Below are positions 13,206 through 42,314 of a stretch of 64,000 nt of DNA, one piece after another. The stretch's first letter is position 1. The number at the start of each line of letters is the position of its first letter. Location: IMG/VR virus record IMGVR_UViG_3300031251_000001, positions 1 through 64,000 of that record. The stretch is one strand, 5' to 3'. The translations under genes and the position numbers were made by a program. The notes beneath the pieces were generated by a model, which did not search any database, was not told the DNA's origin, and was given only the letters and a program-made list of their open reading frames with translations.

Positions 13206-13811
13206 TTATACTTCCTCCTCATGTTGAGTGAACTGTGGTGTCCAGAACCGCTTGACACGTTCGATCAGTGTCACCAGCGGCTCGATAATGATCGATTCAC
13301 GAAGTGGGGAATCGGGACCAGGCACATACCGCAGTTGTAGCCCAGGAACATCTTCCTCCGTCGCGTAACCTGGATGGAGTGCGAGACCTCCCCGCACATT
13401 GATTCGTTTTACGATTAAGCAGGGCGAGCGGGCGTCATTCTCGTACATCCGTCTCGTCATGTCCATCGCTTTGACGTAAGCCTTCCCTAAAGGCGTGGTC
13501 TCGAATGCACTGAACATCCGAGGCAGGGTAGAGTTTTTATCGTCGTGCAGCTTGATGCCGCCGAGCGTGCTGCAGATCAGCAGAAACGGGAAACCATCAA
13601 CGCAGGCGTTAAAGGAATCCACCGACAGACCTGGCGTACCGTTGGTAGCCAGGTGATGAGCTCGCAGCTGCTTGATGTGGCGATCCACTCGAAACAGCTT
13701 CATCACGAGCGAGACAGTCTCCACCTCCAGGTTGATCTGGCTTTGACTGTCGCGCGACGTTCGATGGTTGACCTGCGAGATGAAGGCATCCCGCACGGGA
13801 TCATTCTTCAT
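13206..13811 (-). CDS. hypothetical protein
   Basis: 201-aa ORF coupled to the recA-like gene. Confidence 0.7.
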   Translation of the reverse strand: MKNDPVRDAFISQVNHRTSRDSQSQINLEVETVSLVMKLFRVDRHIKQLRAHHLATNGTPGLSVDSFNACVDGFPFLLICSTLGGIKLHDDKNSTLPRMFSAFETTPLGKAYVKAMDMTRRMYENDARSPCLIVKRINVRGGLALHPGYATEEDVPGLQLRYVPGPDSPLRESIIIEPLVTLIERVKRFWTPQFTQHEEEV

Positions 13812-15522
13812 CGTCTTCGGCCTCCTCCTTGGTCACCGGCTTACGTTCAGCCTCTTCCTTCTCATCCTTCTCCTTGGACTTCTTCTTGATCTTCTTAGCT
13901 TCCTCCTCCATGGCTTTCTTGGAGTGCTCGGCCACCAAGCGAGAAAGGATGTTGGGGTGCTTCTTCTCGTACTCCCGACGAATGGCGTCACGCTGTTCCA
14001 GGATGTCACCATCGAGGTAGGCGATCTCCTGAATACGCAGTGCCTTACGGATCATGGTCAGCACTTCAGGGTTGCGGTGGATCATGTCACCGAGCACACG
14101 GAACGGTACCGCGTCCTCTTTGGTCATCCCCAGCGTCTTAGAGTAAGCCGCGTTGGCGACATCACCCGTTTTCGTGATGGTCATGTGCCAGCCGGCATCG
14201 GTCAGGTTCTTCTTGTAGATGCCCTCCTGCACCGCCTTGGAAGCGAGCAGGGTCACCGTGGCGGCATTCCAGTCATAAGCCGTACGGAACTGCCAGCCCT
14301 GGGGGCTATCGTCAGGCTCGGTCCAGCGCAGGGAGTCTACCTGGATGACACGATGATCAGTACCGAACGAGTTCTTGTCGTTCTTGATCTTGATCGTGCT
14401 ACCCTCGTAGTTCGCAGCTCTGAACTTCTTCACCCGACGCAAGTCGAGATCGAATGATTCGACGAACTGCACCTGCTGACCGCCGGCCTTGCTCCTGGTC
14501 TCGAAGCCCTGCGAATCCTTGCCGAGCTTGGTCTGCGAGACCAGCACAACGAGGACGGGCCACTGTTCCAGGATGTTAGGCAGCGTCTTGAAGAAGTTGG
14601 TGTTCATCAAGGCTTCGTGGGGGTGGGCGCGATCGCCGTGGCCCCGCTCCCAGGTCTTCTCCTGATTCTCCTGAGACATCTTGCCGGAGATGGTATCCAC
14701 GGCCAGACCGAGCACCCGCGACCTGCCGATCTTCTCGATTTTCGTGACCTCACGAAAATTACCATTCTTCAGCTTGTGCTTGGTGGTGATCGGCACGCCG
14801 TTGAGCATGGTATGGATGGCAGCGTCGGTCTGCTTCTTGCAGATCTGTTGCCAGTGATCGACCGACCTGGCCCGATGGATCATGACCCGCTTGATGGAGT
14901 CACCCAGGAGACCCGGCGGCAGATTAGGCGACAACTTCGACTCGTGATCGATGTAGTTACCAAATCCACCATAGAGATCGATCCAGCGCATCAACTCCAA
15001 GGCCAAAGTCGATTTGGTGGAGCCCCAGACGCCAGCCAGGGTAATGACGGTGCCGATCGGCATGCCGGTGGCGCCGGCGATCCACTCCATCGGCAGACAG
15101 CCAGGGATGGGATCGCTGTCCCAGGCCGAGGATGCCCACATGGGGACGCCGATCCACAGGCCCCGTAGGGAGCCGGTGCCGATGAACTGCTGGGTATCGC
15201 CACTCTTCTTGAAGGAATGGGCGAGCTGTGCCTGGATGACGGCACTCTGTACGGTACGAGCGGCACGAGCCGAGGCGGGCAGGATCAGACCGCCGCCTCT
15301 TCTCTGCACGATGGGAGACCGACTAACCAACTCCTCCAGAGCGGGTGCGTCGGTAACGATGGGACTCTTATTGGCTGCTTTCTTTTTCGTGGTGGTGGGT
15401 TTAGCCTGGGCAGGCCTGGAGGGAGGGTTCTTCGTCGGGGGTGTGTAGTCAACGGCCACATCTGTTTCACGTGAAACACGTCCTGACTCGACCTGGATAG
15501 GTCCATTGCCGAAACGACCCAT
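13801..15522 (-). CDS. recA: RecA/UvsX-like recombinase
   Basis: G.P.G.V..LAG..GSTKSTLA (Walker A variant), YIDHE, AVDTISG (Walker B), SQ, AGG..VQF and K..KN motifs. Confidence 0.8.
   Translation of the reverse strand: MGRFGNGPIQVESGRVSRETDVAVDYTPPTKNPPSRPAQAKPTTTKKKAANKSPIVTDAPALEELVSRSPIVQRRGGGLILPASARAARTVQSAVIQAQLAHSFKKSGDTQQFIGTGSLRGLWIGVPMWASSAWDSDPIPGCLPMEWIAGATGMPIGTVITLAGVWGSTKSTLALELMRWIDLYGGFGNYIDHESKLSPNLPPGLLGDSIKRVMIHRARSVDHWQQICKKQTDAAIHTMLNGVPITTKHKLKNGNFREVTKIEKIGRSRVLGLAVDTISGKMSQENQEKTWERGHGDRAHPHEALMNTNFFKTLPNILEQWPVLVVLVSQTKLGKDSQGFETRSKAGGQQVQFVESFDLDLRRVKKFRAANYEGSTIKIKNDKNSFGTDHRVIQVDSLRWTEPDDSPQGWQFRTAYDWNAATVTLLASKAVQEGIYKKNLTDAGWHMTITKTGDVANAAYSKTLGMTKEDAVPFRVLGDMIHRNPEVLTMIRKALRIQEIAYLDGDILEQRDAIRREYEKKHPNILSRLVAEHSKKAMEEEAKKIKKKSKEKDEKEEAERKPVTKEEAEDDEE
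15463..15478. promoter_or_regulatory. parS: canonical bacterial parS site TGTTTCACGTGAAACA
   Basis: Exact match to the chromosomal parS consensus palindrome; read as VSRET in the recA-like frame. Confidence 0.7.
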
Positions 15523-15538
15523 TGCGACTCCTTCGGTT

Positions 15539-15554
15539 CAAAATACGTATTTTG
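15539..15554. promoter_or_regulatory. 16-bp palindrome CAAAATACGTATTTTG, copy 2
   Basis: Exact; between a terminator and the SD of the recA-like gene (16 nt upstream of ATG). Confidence 0.75.
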
Positions 15555-15555
15555 G

Positions 15556-15581
15556 AAACAACCCCGGCCCGAAGGCCGGGG
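15556..15581 (-). terminator. intrinsic terminator
   Basis: Minus strand CCCCGGCC-TTCG-GGCCGGGG-TTGTTT just after the stop of 15596..17557. Confidence 0.7.
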
Positions 15582-15595
15582 CGTCCGTGGGTTGA

Positions 15596-17557
15596 TTATC
15601 GCCGAGTGGCAGTGCCGCCGCTAGGTGGTTTCTTGACCGGAGCGGCAGCAGGTTTCACAGGGGCCTTGCCGGGAGCAGGCTTACCAGCTACTGGTTTGCC
15701 GGGAGCCGGTTTGACCGGGGCCTTGGCGGGTGCCGCAGCTGGTTTCACCGGAGCTTTGGCAGGAGCAGCTGCTGGCTTGACGGGAGCCTTACCGGGAGCC
15801 GGTTTGACCGGAGCCTTACCCGCGACGGGCTTGGCTGCTGGTCGTGCCGGTGGCGTGGGAGCCTTCCCTGCGGGAGTCTTACGGGCAGCAGCACGGGTAT
15901 CGGCCCCTGCTGCAGCACGCTTGGCCCGTTCGATGTCAGCAGTCGAGACAGCCGGCGTGGAGAAATCATCATCCTCTTCTTCGGGGGTGGTTTCTTCCTC
16001 CTCTTCGGCGTCAGCGTCCGCTTCGACCTCGGCATCAGGATCGTAGTCTTCAGTGACTTCCTCTTCGGTTGTCTCATCCTCTACGGGTGCCTCTTCCTCG
16101 GCTTCAGGATCGGCTTCCTGTTCTTCCTCGGCTTCAGGATCAGCTTCGGGATCTTCTTCGACCTCCCCTGCTTCCTGATCCTCCTCGGGTTGATCCTCGG
16201 TGATTTCCTCTTCCTCGACCTCACCCTGATCAGCAGCGTCGACTTCCTCGAAGGTCTCGTCGTCCTCTTCGGGTTCTTCGTACTTGGCTGCTGCCGGCGT
16301 CTTCGTGCCAGCCTTGGGCTTGGCAGCGGCCGTCTTGGGCTTAACGGGTGCAGGAGTCTCATCCTCGCCGCTGGTCTCATCGTCCCCAGGGACAACCGCG
16401 GAAACGCGAGACTGGAGAATGCCCTGAACCTCGTCAGTCAACAGGTGATCGTGCTCTTCCCAGCACTTGATCACCAAGCCGCCCACGTCCTTGAAGGCAC
16501 GAGCGATGACGGCTGCCTGCTCTTCGTCGTCCATAATGCGCAGCAGGCCAGGGTGGCTCTTGCCGTCAGCCTTATAGCCGTACCAGAAGTAGGCGGTCTG
16601 GAAGATCCGCTGGACGTGCTCAGCACTGAGGGTCGCTGAGAAAGGAGCCGTCTTGGCGGTGGCGGCGTATTCGCGGTACAGGTTGGTGTGCCAGCTGTAC
16701 TCGCCCAGTCCGTTGGTCGGAGCCCCACCATCCCAGGTGCATTCAGCGCCGGGAGTGACCTTGGGACCTGCCTTGAAGAACTCCAGGATGCGACCATTGA
16801 CCAGATTGCCTTCCTTACCGAGGAAGCCGATCGGATCAGTCTGGTACATCTTGTTGATATTCGTCTCGTTCTCTGAACCTTCCTTGCGGATGTCCAGATA
16901 GGCGAGCAGGCTCAGCGCTGTCGTTTTACCGATGCGGCAGATCGGCAGCGCATCTTCCTCACCCAAGCCATAAGGAACAGGATCCTTACGCTTGCCCTTG
17001 GCGGAGGGCAGCAAGTAGTTGTTCTTGCCGTGAGCCAGCACCGCACCCTGCATGAAGGCCATGTAGTCAGGGCCGGAGAGAGGCTTGGAGGCGTTGCCCT
17101 CGCGAGAGAACAACTTGTTCCATGACCCCTTCCAGTCTCGACCATCAGCCCACTTGCCGCTCTTGTTGGCTCGGAAGGCAGCCCAGTAGAGCAAGGTGTA
17201 AGGATTGGTGCGTTTACGCTCTTCCTCCTGCTGCGGTGAGTAGAGGATGAAGCTCACGCGGTCCTTGCCGGCGCCGACAAAACTCGCGGTGGCTACCACA
17301 GCGATCCAGTCCGTCTGCTCACGTTCTCCGGTACCGGCACGAGCACGCAAGAACTTGCTATCCGAGTGCACCGGATCCAGCGCAGGGTAGGGACGCATGA
17401 CCAGCTCATGATCCCTGGAAGGATAGTAGAGCTTAGTCCGCACCATCTGGTTGAGCAGCAGTGCGTCGGAACCGCCTCCCTCGTAATCGGCCGCAGCCCC
17501 GGCGGTACGACCGACATTCCCTGTCACAGCTTCCACATTCTTTCCAAAACGACCCAT
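15596..17557 (-). CDS. putative ssDNA-binding / nucleoid protein with acidic tract and histone H1-like Pro-Ala-Lys repeats
   Basis: Lies between DNA polymerase and recA; globular N-terminus, ~110-aa Glu/Asp tract, KAPVKPAAAPA repeats; AAGGAG SD before MGRFGK. Confidence 0.5.
   Translation of the reverse strand: MGRFGKNVEAVTGNVGRTAGAAADYEGGGSDALLLNQMVRTKLYYPSRDHELVMRPYPALDPVHSDSKFLRARAGTGEREQTDWIAVVATASFVGAGKDRVSFILYSPQQEEERKRTNPYTLLYWAAFRANKSGKWADGRDWKGSWNKLFSREGNASKPLSGPDYMAFMQGAVLAHGKNNYLLPSAKGKRKDPVPYGLGEEDALPICRIGKTTALSLLAYLDIRKEGSENETNINKMYQTDPIGFLGKEGNLVNGRILEFFKAGPKVTPGAECTWDGGAPTNGLGEYSWHTNLYREYAATAKTAPFSATLSAEHVQRIFQTAYFWYGYKADGKSHPGLLRIMDDEEQAAVIARAFKDVGGLVIKCWEEHDHLLTDEVQGILQSRVSAVVPGDDETSGEDETPAPVKPKTAAAKPKAGTKTPAAAKYEEPEEDDETFEEVDAADQGEVEEEEITEDQPEEDQEAGEVEEDPEADPEAEEEQEADPEAEEEAPVEDETTEEEVTEDYDPDAEVEADADAEEEEETTPEEEDDDFSTPAVSTADIERAKRAAAGADTRAAARKTPAGKAPTPPARPAAKPVAGKAPVKPAPGKAPVKPAAAPAKAPVKPAAAPAKAPVKPAPGKPVAGKPAPGKAPVKPAAAPVKKPPSGGTATRR
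15620..15880 (-). repeat. tandem coding repeats (KAPVKPAAAPA / KAPVKPAPG)
   Basis: Imperfect 27-33-bp units encoding about 5 KAPVKP repeats. Confidence 0.75.
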
Positions 17558-17571
17558 AACGTCTCCTTCTG

Positions 17572-20500
17572 CTAGGCAGCGGCATACCACAGTGGTATAC
17601 GGTGCTGTTCGCAATCCTTTTCAGTAAACGGTTCTGACCAGCGTGTCGACACTTCGTGTGACATGGATAGATAATAGGGTCCCGTTCCAAGCGACTCACC
17701 GTGAAGGTCAGTCGGGTAGATGGGCACTTGCTTGGCCATGGCCCAGCGGACCAGGCCTGTCTCCGGATGAGCCAGGTAATCGACCAGGTCGTACGGTGCT
17801 TCGATCAAGAGAGCATCGTGGATGGCCAGCAGCATTTTGACTTCCTTCTCGATCCCGGCCTCACGCAGAGCGTAATAGAGGTTGGCCACGCCCCGGTTGA
17901 GGGCACCAGCCACCAGAGCCTGGATCGGGAAGTTCATCGCCTGGCGTTCGATGTCGCCTGCCTGCCGCTTGTCCATCGCTCGTGGGAAGCGACGGCCGCG
18001 ACCAAAGCAGGAGAACATGACGCCCTCTTCGACAGCGATGCGGCGGCACTCGCTGAAGAACGGATCGAGTTCCGGGTACAGCTCGTACACGGTATCGATC
18101 ACCTGCTGTGCTTCCTCCTGGGTGATGTTGACGCCCTGCTCTTTGACAGCGAAGGCGATAGCCTTGGCACCGCGACCATAGAACAAACCGAACACCACGC
18201 TCTTGGCGATATGACGCAGGTTCTCCGCGTCGACCGACTTGAGCCCCGCCTTGCTGTAATCGCACTCCAGTTTGAAAGCGATGACCGCGATCATGGAGTG
18301 GATGTCCAAGTAGTCAGGATGCTTGGGGATACCCGGTGTGTCGCCATCGGGCAGGGTGTTACGACGCGCATGGTCGATGAGCACCTTACACCCCGACATG
18401 ATGCCGGCACCGAACAGCTCCGCACCCTTATAGTCGTGCTCGATGAAGCACATGCCGGGACGGGCCACGAACATCGATCGCAGCTTCTTGTTGTAGATCC
18501 AATTGCCCAGAGCATCCTGGCCGAAGATCTTCTTGAAGTCCTTGTCGCGATTCTTTGACTGATTCTGCAAGTTGGGTCGGAAGGACTTCCAACGGCTGGT
18601 TTCAGCAAAAGGAATGAAGTGGGACTTCACGACATCATCGGCGTCGATGCAGGCAGGCAGACCCTTGTCGTAGACGTGGCCACCCGTTTCGAGATCAATC
18701 TTGTAAGTGCCATCCTTGTTGAGCTCAGGGGGCCTCAGCGTCTGCTTGAGGGCCTGATCAAGAAATCGATGGTTGCGGATGAGATTGATCTTGGGGGCAA
18801 CGTCAGGGTTCTCTTCTGCCAGGATCGCCAACACCTGCTTGTTGGTCGAGGGACTGCGGAACAACGTCTCCCCTCGCTCGACGACATCCTCCCAGCGCAT
18901 CGGTGGCTTGGAAGTATCGATGAGCGGCTCCAGCTCCAGGGAGATAGCTCCCTCGGGCCGCAGCGACAAGGACTCACCCGTCTCCGGGTCGAACTTGCCG
19001 TTGTAACGTGTCCCAAAGAGGATCTCTTTGATCTGGTCGGTTGACCGCACATTGAGACCTTCTCGTTTCACTTTCTTCTTGGTGACCTTGAGTCCCTTCT
19101 TGAGCATCTTGCGTTTAGTCACCAGGTACCAGCGGTCGGGCCAGTTGAATGCCGCTTTGGCCTCCGCCTCCTTCTTGTCTCGTCCTCCCATGAACAAGGT
19201 AGTTAACTCTGCCAGTCTTTGTCGGTCGACTTTGATGCCGGTGGACTGCATCTCCAGGATCGGGGGCAGGGTCGACATGCCCTCCCAGAATGGCTCCCAG
19301 ACGCAATAGCCGTCATAGTCACAGCTGAGTCTCTTCTCCAGCTCCTCAGCGGCACGCAGGGTGACGTCGGCGTCATAACAGCCGTAGCTGTCACGCACGT
19401 GGATGCCGTCCTCCTCCAGCTCACCGATGAGGATCTCGTCAGGACACTCACCGTAACCATCCAGAGCGGCTGCGGTGATCTTCATCTTCGTGCAGTAGTC
19501 ATCCTTCCACTCTTCGAGCTTGCCCTCCCAGCGTGGTGCGGTGGTGTACCGCATCCCCAGGGACTCCAAGCCCAGGAAGGCTGTCTCTTCGATGGCGTGG
19601 GCGGCGACAGCGATATCGAATCCACCCTTGCCGGCCCGACACTGCTGCCACGGCTCACGGCCTTTCTCGTCGACCTTGTAGGGCACGGCGAACTCAGGAC
19701 GCAAGTCGAGACCGAAGTGGACGAACCACTCCAAATCATTCACGAAGAACGCACCGACCGCCCGCAAGCCACGCATGAAGTCTTTGAGTAGGCGGAACAA
19801 CCGTTTGACGGCCGGCCTACCGTACTTGTCGACGAAGGCGACGCCGCCACCCTGGTGGGTGAGCTTGAAACAGACAGCGGTCTTAAAGGCCCAGGACATC
19901 TGCACGGTCCGCAGGTAGGCACCTTTGTCGGTGGGGTGTTGTCCCTGCCACTCAGCATCCCATGCCACCATCCGTTTCTTCCGCCGCTTCATGGTGGCTT
20001 TAGCTTCTTTGACGATCTCGATCGCGTGCTCCAGGGTGGTGCACATACGGTGATCGATATCGTCTTCACGCTGGGTGCCGTCGCCGCTGGTGAGGAGGTA
20101 ACGGAACCGGCCCATGCCGCGCTCGAGTTGTCGCTTGCAGGCCACATCGGAGATAGCCTGCACGGGATGCAGAACCGTCATCACCGAAGCGGTGCGATCC
20201 TCGGCCTCATCGGGACAGCGATAGCTGATCTTCTCGATGCGACCCTCCATGTAGCCGACGCCGAACTTGCTGTCATTGAGTACCAGCTTGCTGGCGTCCG
20301 CCCCCAGGCACAGGATGTACTTGGGTTTGACAAGGAGGATCTCCATCCACAGGAGCGGCAGACAATCGGCTATCCACTTGGCCTTGGCCTTCTTGCTGCC
20401 GTCGGGTGGCACGAACTTGAGGATGTTGGTGACGTACCACTTGTTGGCCCCTTTGATGCGCAGGTCCCGAATGGTGTTGAGGAAGACCTCCCCCGTCTTA

Positions 20501-20883
20501 CCCATGAGGTTACGACGATAGGCTTGTTCCTCTTCCGCCGGCATCTTGCCGATGACCATGACCTCGGCTTCGTGAGGACCATCCACCGGCGGTACGACGT
20601 AGTCGCTGTCCAGCATCGACTTAGCCAGGTGCTCACTGTGCTGACCCCAGATGTGCCCAGGAATGAAAGAGGCCGGCAGATAGACGCCAGGCTTGGCTTC
20701 CACCATGAGCTCGGTACCGGGTACACGCAAGGCCTGGTCGTAGAGCCTGCTCATCTCCTCGGTGTAGAGCACCGGTTCTTTCTTTTTGGTTTTGGCGGTC
20801 TCCACTCCCATTGCCAGGTTGGCAGCGCGAATGAAGTCAGGCCCCGAGACGGGGATGCCAGGTGAGTTCCAGGGATAGATCAT
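17572..20883 (-). CDS. family A DNA polymerase with N-terminal uracil-DNA-glycosylase-like domain (SPO1-type architecture)
   Basis: UDG-4-like VMVIGKMP..EE, YVTNILKF.P, P..ILCLG, VLHP; exonuclease WDAEW and YGCYDAD; polymerase motifs A HDYKGAEL, B RHIAKSVVFGLFYG, C IHDALL. Confidence 0.9.
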   Translation of the reverse strand: MIYPWNSPGIPVSGPDFIRAANLAMGVETAKTKKKEPVLYTEEMSRLYDQALRVPGTELMVEAKPGVYLPASFIPGHIWGQHSEHLAKSMLDSDYVVPPVDGPHEAEVMVIGKMPAEEEQAYRRNLMGKTGEVFLNTIRDLRIKGANKWYVTNILKFVPPDGSKKAKAKWIADCLPLLWMEILLVKPKYILCLGADASKLVLNDSKFGVGYMEGRIEKISYRCPDEAEDRTASVMTVLHPVQAISDVACKRQLERGMGRFRYLLTSGDGTQREDDIDHRMCTTLEHAIEIVKEAKATMKRRKKRMVAWDAEWQGQHPTDKGAYLRTVQMSWAFKTAVCFKLTHQGGGVAFVDKYGRPAVKRLFRLLKDFMRGLRAVGAFFVNDLEWFVHFGLDLRPEFAVPYKVDEKGREPWQQCRAGKGGFDIAVAAHAIEETAFLGLESLGMRYTTAPRWEGKLEEWKDDYCTKMKITAAALDGYGECPDEILIGELEEDGIHVRDSYGCYDADVTLRAAEELEKRLSCDYDGYCVWEPFWEGMSTLPPILEMQSTGIKVDRQRLAELTTLFMGGRDKKEAEAKAAFNWPDRWYLVTKRKMLKKGLKVTKKKVKREGLNVRSTDQIKEILFGTRYNGKFDPETGESLSLRPEGAISLELEPLIDTSKPPMRWEDVVERGETLFRSPSTNKQVLAILAEENPDVAPKINLIRNHRFLDQALKQTLRPPELNKDGTYKIDLETGGHVYDKGLPACIDADDVVKSHFIPFAETSRWKSFRPNLQNQSKNRDKDFKKIFGQDALGNWIYNKKLRSMFVARPGMCFIEHDYKGAELFGAGIMSGCKVLIDHARRNTLPDGDTPGIPKHPDYLDIHSMIAVIAFKLECDYSKAGLKSVDAENLRHIAKSVVFGLFYGRGAKAIAFAVKEQGVNITQEEAQQVIDTVYELYPELDPFFSECRRIAVEEGVMFSCFGRGRRFPRAMDKRQAGDIERQAMNFPIQALVAGALNRGVANLYYALREAGIEKEVKMLLAIHDALLIEAPYDLVDYLAHPETGLVRWAMAKQVPIYPTDLHGESLGTGPYYLSMSHEVSTRWSEPFTEKDCEQHRIPLWYAAA

Positions 20884-42078: not shown

Positions 42079-42314
42079 TTCGTCTTCTTTCCGGGAAACA
42101 GGGGGTGAACCTCTTCGAGCTGAACCGGCGGCACAGCGATCTCCAGCGGTTCGTTGGTGCGGGTGATCTTGCGGACCGCACCTTCGCCACGCAAGAGTTT
42201 CTTTCTGGCCTCGTCGGAAGAGCGTGCGGTGATGTCCACTACGCTCTGGACACGGTAGACCTGAACAGTGTCAGCTCGATACAGCTTCAGGCTGGGGCGT
42301 TTCTTCTTGGCCAC
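42075..42314 (-). CDS. small hypothetical protein
   Basis: GTG start after an AGGAG SD (MAKKKRPSLK...); V.ITA.S.DEA motif. Confidence 0.5.
   Translation of the reverse strand: MAKKKRPSLKLYRADTVQVYRVQSVVDITARSSDEARKKLLRGEGAVRKITRTNEPLEIAVPPVQLEEVHPLFPGKKTK

What the first reader, a model, noticed from the sequence alone, without database searches (positions are those of the whole stretch)
15463..15478. Perfect host-type parS site embedded in the phage recA-like gene
Seen: TGTTTCACGTGAAACA, an exact match to the bacterial chromosomal parS consensus, encoding VSRET in the low-complexity N-terminal extension. It is 60 bp from palindrome copy 2, giving the order terminator - palindrome - SD - parS. 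Chance expectation for a given 16-mer in 64 kb is about 1.5e-5 under equal base frequencies. No parA/parB gene is visible in this window. Inference: the phage may recruit host ParB (and through it ParA/SMC) to position or segregate its genome, titrate host segregation machinery, or let ParB spreading regulate recA.
Basis: partly seen in the sequence, partly recalled or inferred. Interest (0 to 1): 0.78.

Follow-up and report, generated by a model that had tools for sequence, protein, structure and literature searches.

The report
Orphan host-type parS in jumbo phage
A complete 214-kb soil phage with no partition genes of its own carries one perfect copy of the bacterial chromosome "centromere" site parS inside its recombinase gene.

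Summary
TGTTTCACGTGAAACA sits at 15463-15478, spanning the last base of codon 15 and codons 16-20 (VSRET) of a 573-aa UvsX/RecA-like gene on the minus strand. It lies 60 bp past a promoter-like palindrome.

It is the only parS-like site (up to 3 mismatches) in the closed 214,229-bp genome. That genome has no ParB, ParA, tyrosine integrase or tubulin gene.

Chance expectation is 1.4e-5 to 4.5e-5 per genome. The same 16-mer is strongly over-represented in phage DNA:
- at least 119 IMG/VR contigs, against 2 to 24 for control palindromes;
- 278 GenBank phage records, against 0 and 4 for controls.

None of 55 checked parS-bearing records encodes a ParB N-terminal domain. About 26 of the 119 IMG/VR loci are phi29-like, and phi29 is the published case of a phage using host Spo0J/ParB through its own parS sites.

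Against a function here: there is one site only, it lies in a poorly conserved N-terminal peptide, the only close relative (60% identity) lacks it, ten distant relatives lack it, and the host is unknown.

Verdict: a real site, probably (about 0.55) a selected host-ParB loading site. It is a new member of a known kind. Binding and function are inferred, not shown.

The parts
15463..15478 (.). Perfect 16-bp chromosomal-type parS palindrome TGTTTCACGTGAAACA. It is the only copy in the 214-kb genome.
   Evidence: Chance expectation is 1.4e-5 to 4.5e-5 per genome.
13801..15522 (-). UvsX/RecA-like recombinase gene (573 aa). parS covers the last base of codon 15 and codons 16-20, inside a poorly conserved N-terminal peptide that starts with MGRFG.
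   Evidence: The N-terminal motif is shared with two other genes of the phage.
15528..15533 (-). Shine-Dalgarno AAGGAG, with a 5-nt spacer before the ATG.
   Evidence: Read from the sequence. A GGAGG stands in the same place in the relative L002.
15539..15554 (.). Copy of the genome-wide palindrome CAAAATACGTATTTTG, a likely phage promoter or operator, 60 bp from parS.
   Evidence: The genome has 22 copies of the 14-bp core. About half lie 5-33 nt upstream of gene starts. It is conserved at the same place in L002.
15562..15581 (-). G+C-rich hairpin (CCCCGGCC, loop, GGCCGGGG) followed by a T-rich run. It looks like a terminator for the upstream gene.
   Evidence: An equivalent hairpin is present in L002.
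15596..17557 (-). Upstream gene: a globular N-terminal part, an acidic E/D-rich stretch and a basic AKAPVKPA-repeat tail. Its probable start MGRFGKN is at 17557.

Best explanation
The 16-mer is a genuine orphan parS: a nucleation site for the host's chromosomal ParB, kept in a phage that encodes no ParA or ParB. Proposed mechanism: after injection, or during replication, host ParB-CTP dimers recognise the palindrome, close into clamps and slide onto the flanking replication and recombination module. The resulting ParB complex ties the phage chromosome to the host's ParA, SMC or pole-anchoring apparatus. Phage DNA would then be positioned and inherited with the nucleoid when lytic growth stalls, for example in starved or dormant rhizosphere cells or in a carrier state. 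Many replicating copies could also titrate host ParB. The site is written into five codons of a mutation-tolerant N-terminal peptide of the recombinase gene. Shown here: the sequence, its uniqueness, the absence of phage ParAB, the strong enrichment of this exact 16-mer in ParB-less phages, and the phi29 precedent. Inferred: ParB binding in this host, selection on this particular copy, and the downstream effect.
For: - Exact consensus match at 15463-15478. Expectation is 1.4e-5 to 4.5e-5 per genome.
- Three of its five full codons are rare in this phage: GTT 15%, TCA 10%, ACA 10%. P(parS | peptide RVSRET) is 4.6e-5.
- The genome is closed, with a roughly 126-bp terminal overlap, and has no ParB_N, HTH_ParB, CbiA, AAA_31 or Phage_integrase match.
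Controls gave 2 for the reversed palindrome, 21 for swapped half-sites, of which about 7 are one family, and 24 for the phage's own palindrome.
- GenBank phages: 278 records, 152 at 99% identity or more, against 0 and 4 for controls.
- 0 of 50 IMG/VR and 0 of 5 cultured parS-bearing records encode ParB_N. The five cultured phages carry 1-3 perfect sites, tightly clustered where there are several.
- High-GC parS-bearing viral loci have all-different flanks and mostly phage-type genes.
- phi29 carries five parS sites and exploits host Spo0J (PMC2731898).
- All 17 ParBs tested from diverse clades prefer parS (PMC7383237).
- An independent assembly of the source run gives the same sequence at even depth.
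Against: - There is one site only, whereas phi29 has five and several analogues have 2-5.
- It lies in a coding, poorly conserved N-terminal peptide.
- The only close relative (60% identity, same synteny) has no parS at the homologous place or anywhere on its 9.2-kb contig.
- Ten distant relatives (RecA-like 24-36% identity, 1.64 Mb in total, four at least 90% complete) have none within 2 mismatches.
- The host is unknown. The ThyX hint to Planctomycetota, Chloroflexota or Gemmatimonadales is weak (37-43% identity), and in five such MAGs only two 1-mismatch sites were found.
- The phage encodes DNA methylases and glycosyltransferases that might modify its DNA.
- No binding or phenotype data exist.
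Confidence: 0.55

Rival explanations
1. Fortuitous palindrome. The 16-mer arose by drift in a fast-evolving N-terminal peptide and is not under selection as DNA. It could still bind ParB by accident if the host has one.
For: - Single copy, in coding sequence.
- Absent from the only close relative and from ten distant relatives.
- The number of 16-bp perfect palindromes outside the repeat family (4) matches chance (about 2.9).
- The V and R residues it encodes are shared with a paralogous N-terminal motif (GNVGR against GRVSR). Protein constraint therefore already fixes part of the sequence.
Against: - The expectation of this exact 16-mer is 1.4e-5 to 4.5e-5 per genome.
On that base rate alone most phage-borne copies are not chance.
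- It uses three rare codons.
Confidence: 0.3
2. A cis element unrelated to ParB: an operator for a phage-encoded DNA-binding protein, or an mRNA hairpin tuning translation of the recombinase.
For: It sits 44 nt into the ORF and 60 bp from a promoter-like palindrome. In some Microbacterium phages the same 16-mer lies inside an HTH-protein gene.
Against: - It is unique in the genome, so it is not part of a regulon.
- The RNA fold of the region is no more stable than shuffles, z = +1.16.
- No Rfam family matches.
- No ParB-type HTH is encoded.
- Exact identity to the pan-bacterial ParB site would then be a coincidence.
Confidence: 0.08
3. Host-derived patch or assembly chimera that brought a chromosomal parS into the contig.
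For: Chromosomal parS sites often lie inside genes. The source is a metagenome assembly.
Against: - A second assembly of the source run covers 14000-17000 in one 69-kb contig with no differences and flat depth.
- The flanking gene and its start are conserved in a relative from another sample.
- No bacterial homologue of the gene turned up.
Confidence: 0.03

Closest known systems
phi29-family parS sites bound by host Spo0J (ParB) for spore entrapment of the phage genome. Meijer et al. 2005, as summarised in PMC2731898.
   Same: A lytic phage without its own ParB carries the host's chromosomal parS sequence, and the host partition protein acts on phage DNA. About 26 of the 119 parS-bearing IMG/VR loci found here are phi29-like.
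   Different: phi29 is a roughly 19-kb protein-primed podovirus of endospore formers, with five sites plus Spo0A boxes. This is a 214-kb PolA-encoding myovirus-like phage of 58% G+C with one site inside a gene, an unknown host, and no evidence of sporulation.
Chromosomal ParABS centromeres (parS consensus of Livny et al. 2007; ParB specificity in PMC7383237).
   Same: Identical 16-bp sequence.
   Different: Chromosomal sites cluster near oriC on a replicon that encodes parAB. Here there is a single site, no parAB and no origin signal.
Plasmid-prophage partition cassettes (P1 and N15 from general knowledge; extrachromosomal mycobacteriophage parABS, PMC7157519).
   Same: Phage DNA segregated by a ParB-parS complex.
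   Different: Those elements encode their own ParA and ParB and use their own parS repeats. This phage encodes neither, and no tyrosine integrase or other lysogeny gene was found among those tested.
Unstudied orphan parS sites seen here in cultured phages: Roseobacter phage DSS3P8, Lactobacillus phage Lpa804, Gordonia phage PatrickStar, Microbacterium phage OneinaGillian, Clostridium phage phi8074-B1.
   Same: Perfect consensus parS and no ParB_N gene. Some are large phages (142-146 kb). OneinaGillian has a single site inside a gene, as here.
   Different: Most have 2-3 clustered, intergenic sites among small hypothetical genes. Their hosts are known to belong to ParB-bearing clades. None is related to this phage.

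Membership tests
Chromosomal-type parS (ParB nucleation site) | 16-bp palindrome matching the consensus TGTTNCACGTGAAACA | tested here: met
   Exact match at 15463-15478.
Chromosomal-type parS (ParB nucleation site) | Bound by a cognate ParB, with CTP-dependent loading and spreading | not testable with these tools
   The host is unknown. The complex-prediction job was not folded and gives no evidence. Literature shows 17 diverse ParBs prefer this sequence (PMC7383237).
Chromosomal-type parS (ParB nucleation site) | Lies on a replicon that encodes parA and parB, usually in an origin-proximal cluster | tested here: not met
   No ParB_N, HTH_ParB, CbiA or AAA_31 in the whole genome. Single site. 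No origin signal in the GC skew.
phi29-type phage-borne host parS | Phage genome carries host-type parS while lacking its own ParB | tested here: met
phi29-type phage-borne host parS | Several parS sites spread over the genome (five in phi29) | tested here: not met
   One site, and none within 3 mismatches elsewhere.
phi29-type phage-borne host parS | phi29-like virion and replication genes (protein-primed PolB, gp16 ATPase, phi29 MCP) | tested here: not met
   The phage has a UDG-PolA fusion, DnaB, primase, gpA-type TerL, baseplate J and an RNAP beta-prime-like gene. The nearest known phages are Salmonella phage Arash and Vibrio phage D69, at 24-30% amino-acid identity.
phi29-type phage-borne host parS | Host is an endospore former and the site promotes spore entrapment | not testable with these tools
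   Host unknown. 57.6% G+C and the ThyX affinities do not point to Bacillus.
Self-encoded ParABS partition cassette of plasmid-prophages | Adjacent parA and parB genes with cognate parS repeats, and a lysogenic or plasmid lifestyle | tested here: not met
   No ParA or ParB families and no tyrosine integrase.
Structured cis-regulatory RNA | Unusually stable or conserved RNA fold, or a match to a curated RNA family | tested here: not met
   z = +1.16 against shuffles. No Rfam hit in the window.

The most novel reading that the evidence does not exclude
Orphan host-type parS sites may be a widespread and largely unstudied way for phages to plug into the host ParB, ParA and SMC machinery, well beyond phi29 and sporulation. 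If so, the jumbo phage's single coding-embedded site would be a recent host-specific adaptation that couples a 214-kb phage chromosome to host chromosome organisation.
Probability: 0.4. Interest if true: 0.8.

Novelty: new member of a known kind. Interest (0 to 1): 0.55.

Why it matters
If the site works, a large lytic-looking phage with no partition genes would borrow the host's centromere-binding protein through sixteen bases written into a recombinase gene. That would extend the phi29 principle to a new phage type, probably one whose host does not form spores. It also points to a general survival or genome-organisation strategy, such as inheritance during stalled infection, SMC recruitment or ParB titration. 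The strategy is testable in cultured analogues: Lpa804, DSS3P8 and the Gordonia and Microbacterium phages. A perfect parS could also serve as a host-range marker, since it should be useful only in hosts with canonical ParB.

Tried and rejected
- More relatives. A single-protein scan of viral contigs with the RecA-like protein found none, and the PolA scan found none. The metagenome and genome scans with the two-sequence alignment returned only the phage itself and L002.
- Population variation. The source run shows no variants. Two other rhizosphere runs hold only scattered 151-bp pieces, none over parS.
- Origin mapping. Cumulative GC skew rises monotonically and gives no origin signal, because 214 of 279 crude ORFs are on one strand.
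- Host identification. The protein atlas gives only viral clusters. ThyX's best bacterial hits are 37-43% identical, in Planctomycetota, Chloroflexota and Gemmatimonadales MAGs, which is too weak to name a host. parS counts in five such MAGs were uninformative.
- Nucleus-forming (phiKZ-like) phage, which would exclude ParB. No tubulin was found, and the nearest phages are Arash- and D69-like, not phiKZ. Chimallin itself was not tested.
- Hypermodified pyrimidines. ThyX is present and no ThyA-like hydroxymethylase was found, but methylases and glycosyltransferases leave this open.
- RNA structure and Rfam: nothing.
- ParB-DNA complex prediction: the job was not folded and is no evidence either way.
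- Swapped half-site control. It turned out partly contaminated by one contig family and by arrays of parS half-sites, so it overstates the chance background.
- Literature. The held library yielded no paper on natural host-type parS in phages beyond the phi29 family. Livny et al. 2007 is not held. This does not show that no such paper exists.

Full report
**What is there.** The 16-mer TGTTTCACGTGAAACA is at window 15463-15478. It lies in the minus-strand ORF 13801-15522. That ORF is 573 aa and matches RecA (Pfam E=5e-9) and the PHROG UvsX-like recombinase family. In that frame the site covers the last base of codon 15 and codons 16-20, GTT TCA CGT GAA ACA, which encode VSRET.

On the minus strand the order is:
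- end of a 653/672-aa gene with acidic and basic low-complexity tails;
- a G+C hairpin (15581-15562);
- the palindrome CAAAATACGTATTTTG (15554-15539);
- the Shine-Dalgarno AAGGAG (15533-15528);
- the ATG (15522);
- parS.

Downstream and upstream neighbours form a replication and recombination module: a UDG-PolA fusion, a primase, a DnaB-like helicase, and Rad50/Mre11-like genes.

**The genome.** The window is the first 64 kb of a 214,229-bp IMG/VR virus record. It comes from a rhizosphere metagenome, contig Ga0265327_10000075. The first 126 bases recur at the far end, so the assembly is closed.
- G+C is 57.6%.
- There is one tRNA-Met.
- 214 of 279 crude ORFs are on one strand.
- There is a gpA-type terminase, a baseplate J gene and an RNA polymerase beta-prime-like gene.
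- The nearest known phages are only 24-30% identical in TerL and the RNAP subunit: Salmonella phage Arash and Vibrio phages D69/D181/D148.

Whole-genome family searches found no ParB_N, HTH_ParB, CbiA, AAA_31, Phage_integrase or tubulin. In each case the search did ring in control genomes. The phage therefore has no recognisable partition system of its own, and no tyrosine integrase or other lysogeny gene among those tested.

**Is it more than chance, within this genome?** The expected number of exact occurrences in the genome is 2.2e-5 to 4.5e-5 under order 0-3 Markov models, and 1.4e-5 under a codon-aware model. There is no second site within 3 mismatches. A perfect 16-bp palindrome as such is not remarkable. 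Apart from 13 copies of the phage's own CAAAATACGTATTTTG there are four, against about 2.9 expected. The unusual thing is that one of them is exactly parS. Three of the five codons it uses are rare in this phage (GTT 15%, TCA 10%, ACA 10%), and given the peptide RVSRET the DNA would be parS with probability 4.6e-5.

**Base rate in phages.** This comparison was the most informative.

| Pattern | IMG/VR contigs | GenBank phage records |
|---|---|---|
| Reversed palindrome, ACAAAGTGCACTTTGT | 2 | 0 |
| Swapped half-sites, GTGAAACATGTTTCAC | 21 | not run |
| Shuffled half-site, TTCTGTACGTACAGAA | not run | 4, one lineage |
| The phage's own palindrome, CAAAATACGTATTTTG | 24 | not run |

- About seven of the 21 swapped half-site hits are one contig family, and several others carry extra parS half-sites. 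That control therefore overstates the chance background.
- The GenBank phage collection holds 2.3 Gb, so about 0.5 exact copies of any one 16-mer are expected by chance.
- GenBank hits are in phages of Clostridium, Microbacterium, Listeria, Gordonia, Bacillus, Lactobacillus, Arthrobacter, Ruegeria and Clavibacter, and in microviruses and inovirus-like records. No Escherichia, Klebsiella or Salmonella phage appears among the ten commonest names or the 116 rows listed.
- None of 50 parS-bearing IMG/VR records has a ParB_N gene, and none of five cultured examples does.
- Those five cultured phages carry one to three perfect sites, tightly clustered where there are several.
- Among the IMG/VR loci, parS sites in contigs of at least 50% G+C have all-different flanks, so they are independent. 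Ten ORFs taken at or next to the site in loci of at least 55% G+C were mostly unmatched in Pfam or phage-type: polyvalent protein, SNF2 helicase, ClpP-type protease, cell-wall hydrolase.

On base rates, then, a perfect parS in a phage genome is much more often biological than accidental.

**Precedent.** About 26 of the 119 IMG/VR loci are phi29-like, with protein-primed PolB, gp16 ATPase, phi29 capsid and tail knob. For phi29 it is published that the genome carries five parS sites. Host Spo0J (ParB) helps segregate the phage genome into the prespore (PMC2731898, citing Meijer et al. 2005). ParB specificity for this sequence is conserved across 17 ParBs from diverse clades (PMC7383237). Any host with a canonical ParB should therefore load it on this site, provided the phage DNA is accessible and unmodified.

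**Evidence against function in this phage.**
- The RecA-like protein has one close homologue in 1.8 billion representatives, P0002 at 60% identity, on a 9,255-bp contig from another sample.
- That contig has the same synteny: gene end, hairpin, the same palindrome, Shine-Dalgarno, ATG. It has no parS within 3 mismatches, and the local peptide differs.
- All other homologues, about 35% identical or less, align only from residue 100-140 onward. The N-terminal peptide is therefore lineage-specific.
- Ten distant relatives in IMG/VR have no parS within 2 mismatches. Their RecA-like proteins are 24-36% identical, they total 1.64 Mb, and four are at least 90% complete.
- The site is thus a lineage-specific gain, or a loss in the relative, and conservation at synonymous positions cannot be tested.
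- The source run shows no variation, and other runs do not cover the site.

**Other readings.**
- The RNA fold of the 5' region is no better than shuffles, z = +1.16.
- There is no Rfam hit.
- The site is unique, so it is not an operator of a regulon.
- An assembly chimera is unlikely, because an independent assembly gives an identical 69-kb contig at flat depth.

**Host and accessibility.**
- The host is unknown.
- ThyX's best bacterial matches (37-43% identity) are Planctomycetota, Chloroflexota and Gemmatimonadales MAGs. Two of five such MAGs have one 1-mismatch parS each. This is too weak to use.
- No tubulin was found, and there is no phiKZ affinity. Nothing therefore suggests a phage nucleus that would exclude ParB, though chimallin was not tested.
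- ThyX is present and no ThyA-like hydroxymethylase was found.
- DNA methylases and several glycosyltransferases are encoded, so DNA modification remains a caveat.

**Verdict.** I put about 0.55 on a selected host-ParB loading site, 0.3 on a fortuitous site (which could still bind ParB), and the rest on other cis functions or artefact. It is a new member of a known kind, phage-borne host parS as in phi29. It differs in phage type, probably in host biology, and in having a single coding-embedded site. The broader pattern seen along the way, hundreds of ParB-less phages with perfect parS, is the more interesting lead. I found no paper on it in the held library.

Noticed in passing
GenBank phage collection: KT870145.1 (841, 141133, 143177); MG557979.1 (69954, 71614, 76749); KU998252.1 (78559, 79524); MH727556.1 (53050); JQ246028.1 (5586, 17479): Perfect parS sites occur in many cultured phages that have no ParB_N gene. 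In all, 278 records match, against 0 and 4 for control palindromes. Hosts include Ruegeria, Lactobacillus, Gordonia, Microbacterium, Clostridium, Listeria, Arthrobacter and Clavibacter. Multi-site phages have the sites clustered within 1-7 kb, mostly intergenic among small hypothetical genes.
   Followed up: partly
IMG/VR loci L051, L061, L064, L084, L118, L144 (and 11 more in the same terL cluster): A group of 17 viral contigs shares a terminase large subunit (median 51% identity, 62% to Pelagibacter phage HTVC027P). In six of them a perfect parS lies 33-151 bp upstream of terL in AT-rich non-coding DNA near the contig end, with otherwise unalignable flanks. In the other eleven the sites lie elsewhere, from just inside terL to about 2.4 kb on either side. 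HTVC027P itself has no parS within 3 kb of its terL.
   Followed up: partly
Whole genome G000; window copies at 485, 15539, 20897, 32135, 34418, 39030, 49491: There are 22 copies of the palindrome core AAAATACGTATTTT (17 expected-free perfect 16-22 bp palindromes). About half lie 5-33 nt upstream of start codons, after terminator-like hairpins. The element is conserved at the same place in the 60%-identical relative L002. It is a likely phage-specific promoter or operator.
   Followed up: partly
window 15522, window 17557, G000 72464 (L171:8464), L002:235: Three proteins of the phage start with a shared N-terminal peptide, M-x-RFG followed by a G-[NR]-[VL]-x-R-type stretch. They are the RecA-like protein, the 653-aa acidic/basic protein and a 1,429-aa protein. 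The relative's RecA-like protein shares only the M-x-RFG start. This may be a common targeting or interaction tag. parS is written into this peptide.
   Followed up: partly
G000 1-126 and 214103-214229: The first roughly 126 bases are repeated at the end of the record. The genome is therefore closed (circular or terminally redundant), although IMG/VR labels it linear.
   Followed up: yes
window 15596-17614 (-): The upstream gene encodes a globular N-terminal part, a long E/D-rich acidic stretch and a C-terminal AKAPVKPA-repeat basic tail that resembles histone-H1/AlgP-type DNA-binding tails. The relative L002 ends with a similar K-rich tail.
   Followed up: no
window 17572-20883 (-); G000 96994-100695 (-): The DNA polymerase A carries an N-terminal uracil-DNA-glycosylase-superfamily domain. 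A 1,232-aa protein has an RNA polymerase Rpb1 domain 5 (beta-prime-like). The nearest known phages are Salmonella phage Arash and Vibrio phages D69/D181/D148, at 24-30% identity, so this is a deeply divergent jumbo-phage lineage.
   Followed up: partly
IMG/VR loci L159, L160, L164, L166: Contigs found with the swapped half-site control (GTGAAACATGTTTCAC) carry further tandem GTGAAACA or TGTTTCAC half-sites next to the hit. This suggests arrays of parS half-sites rather than chance matches.
   Followed up: no
GenBank Microbacterium phages (e.g. NC_048020.1 at 42157-42174, MK977698.1 at 42172-42189): In one Microbacterium phage group the perfect parS lies inside a gene annotated as a helix-turn-helix DNA-binding protein. 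This recalls the parS inside chromosomal parB/spo0J genes.
   Followed up: no
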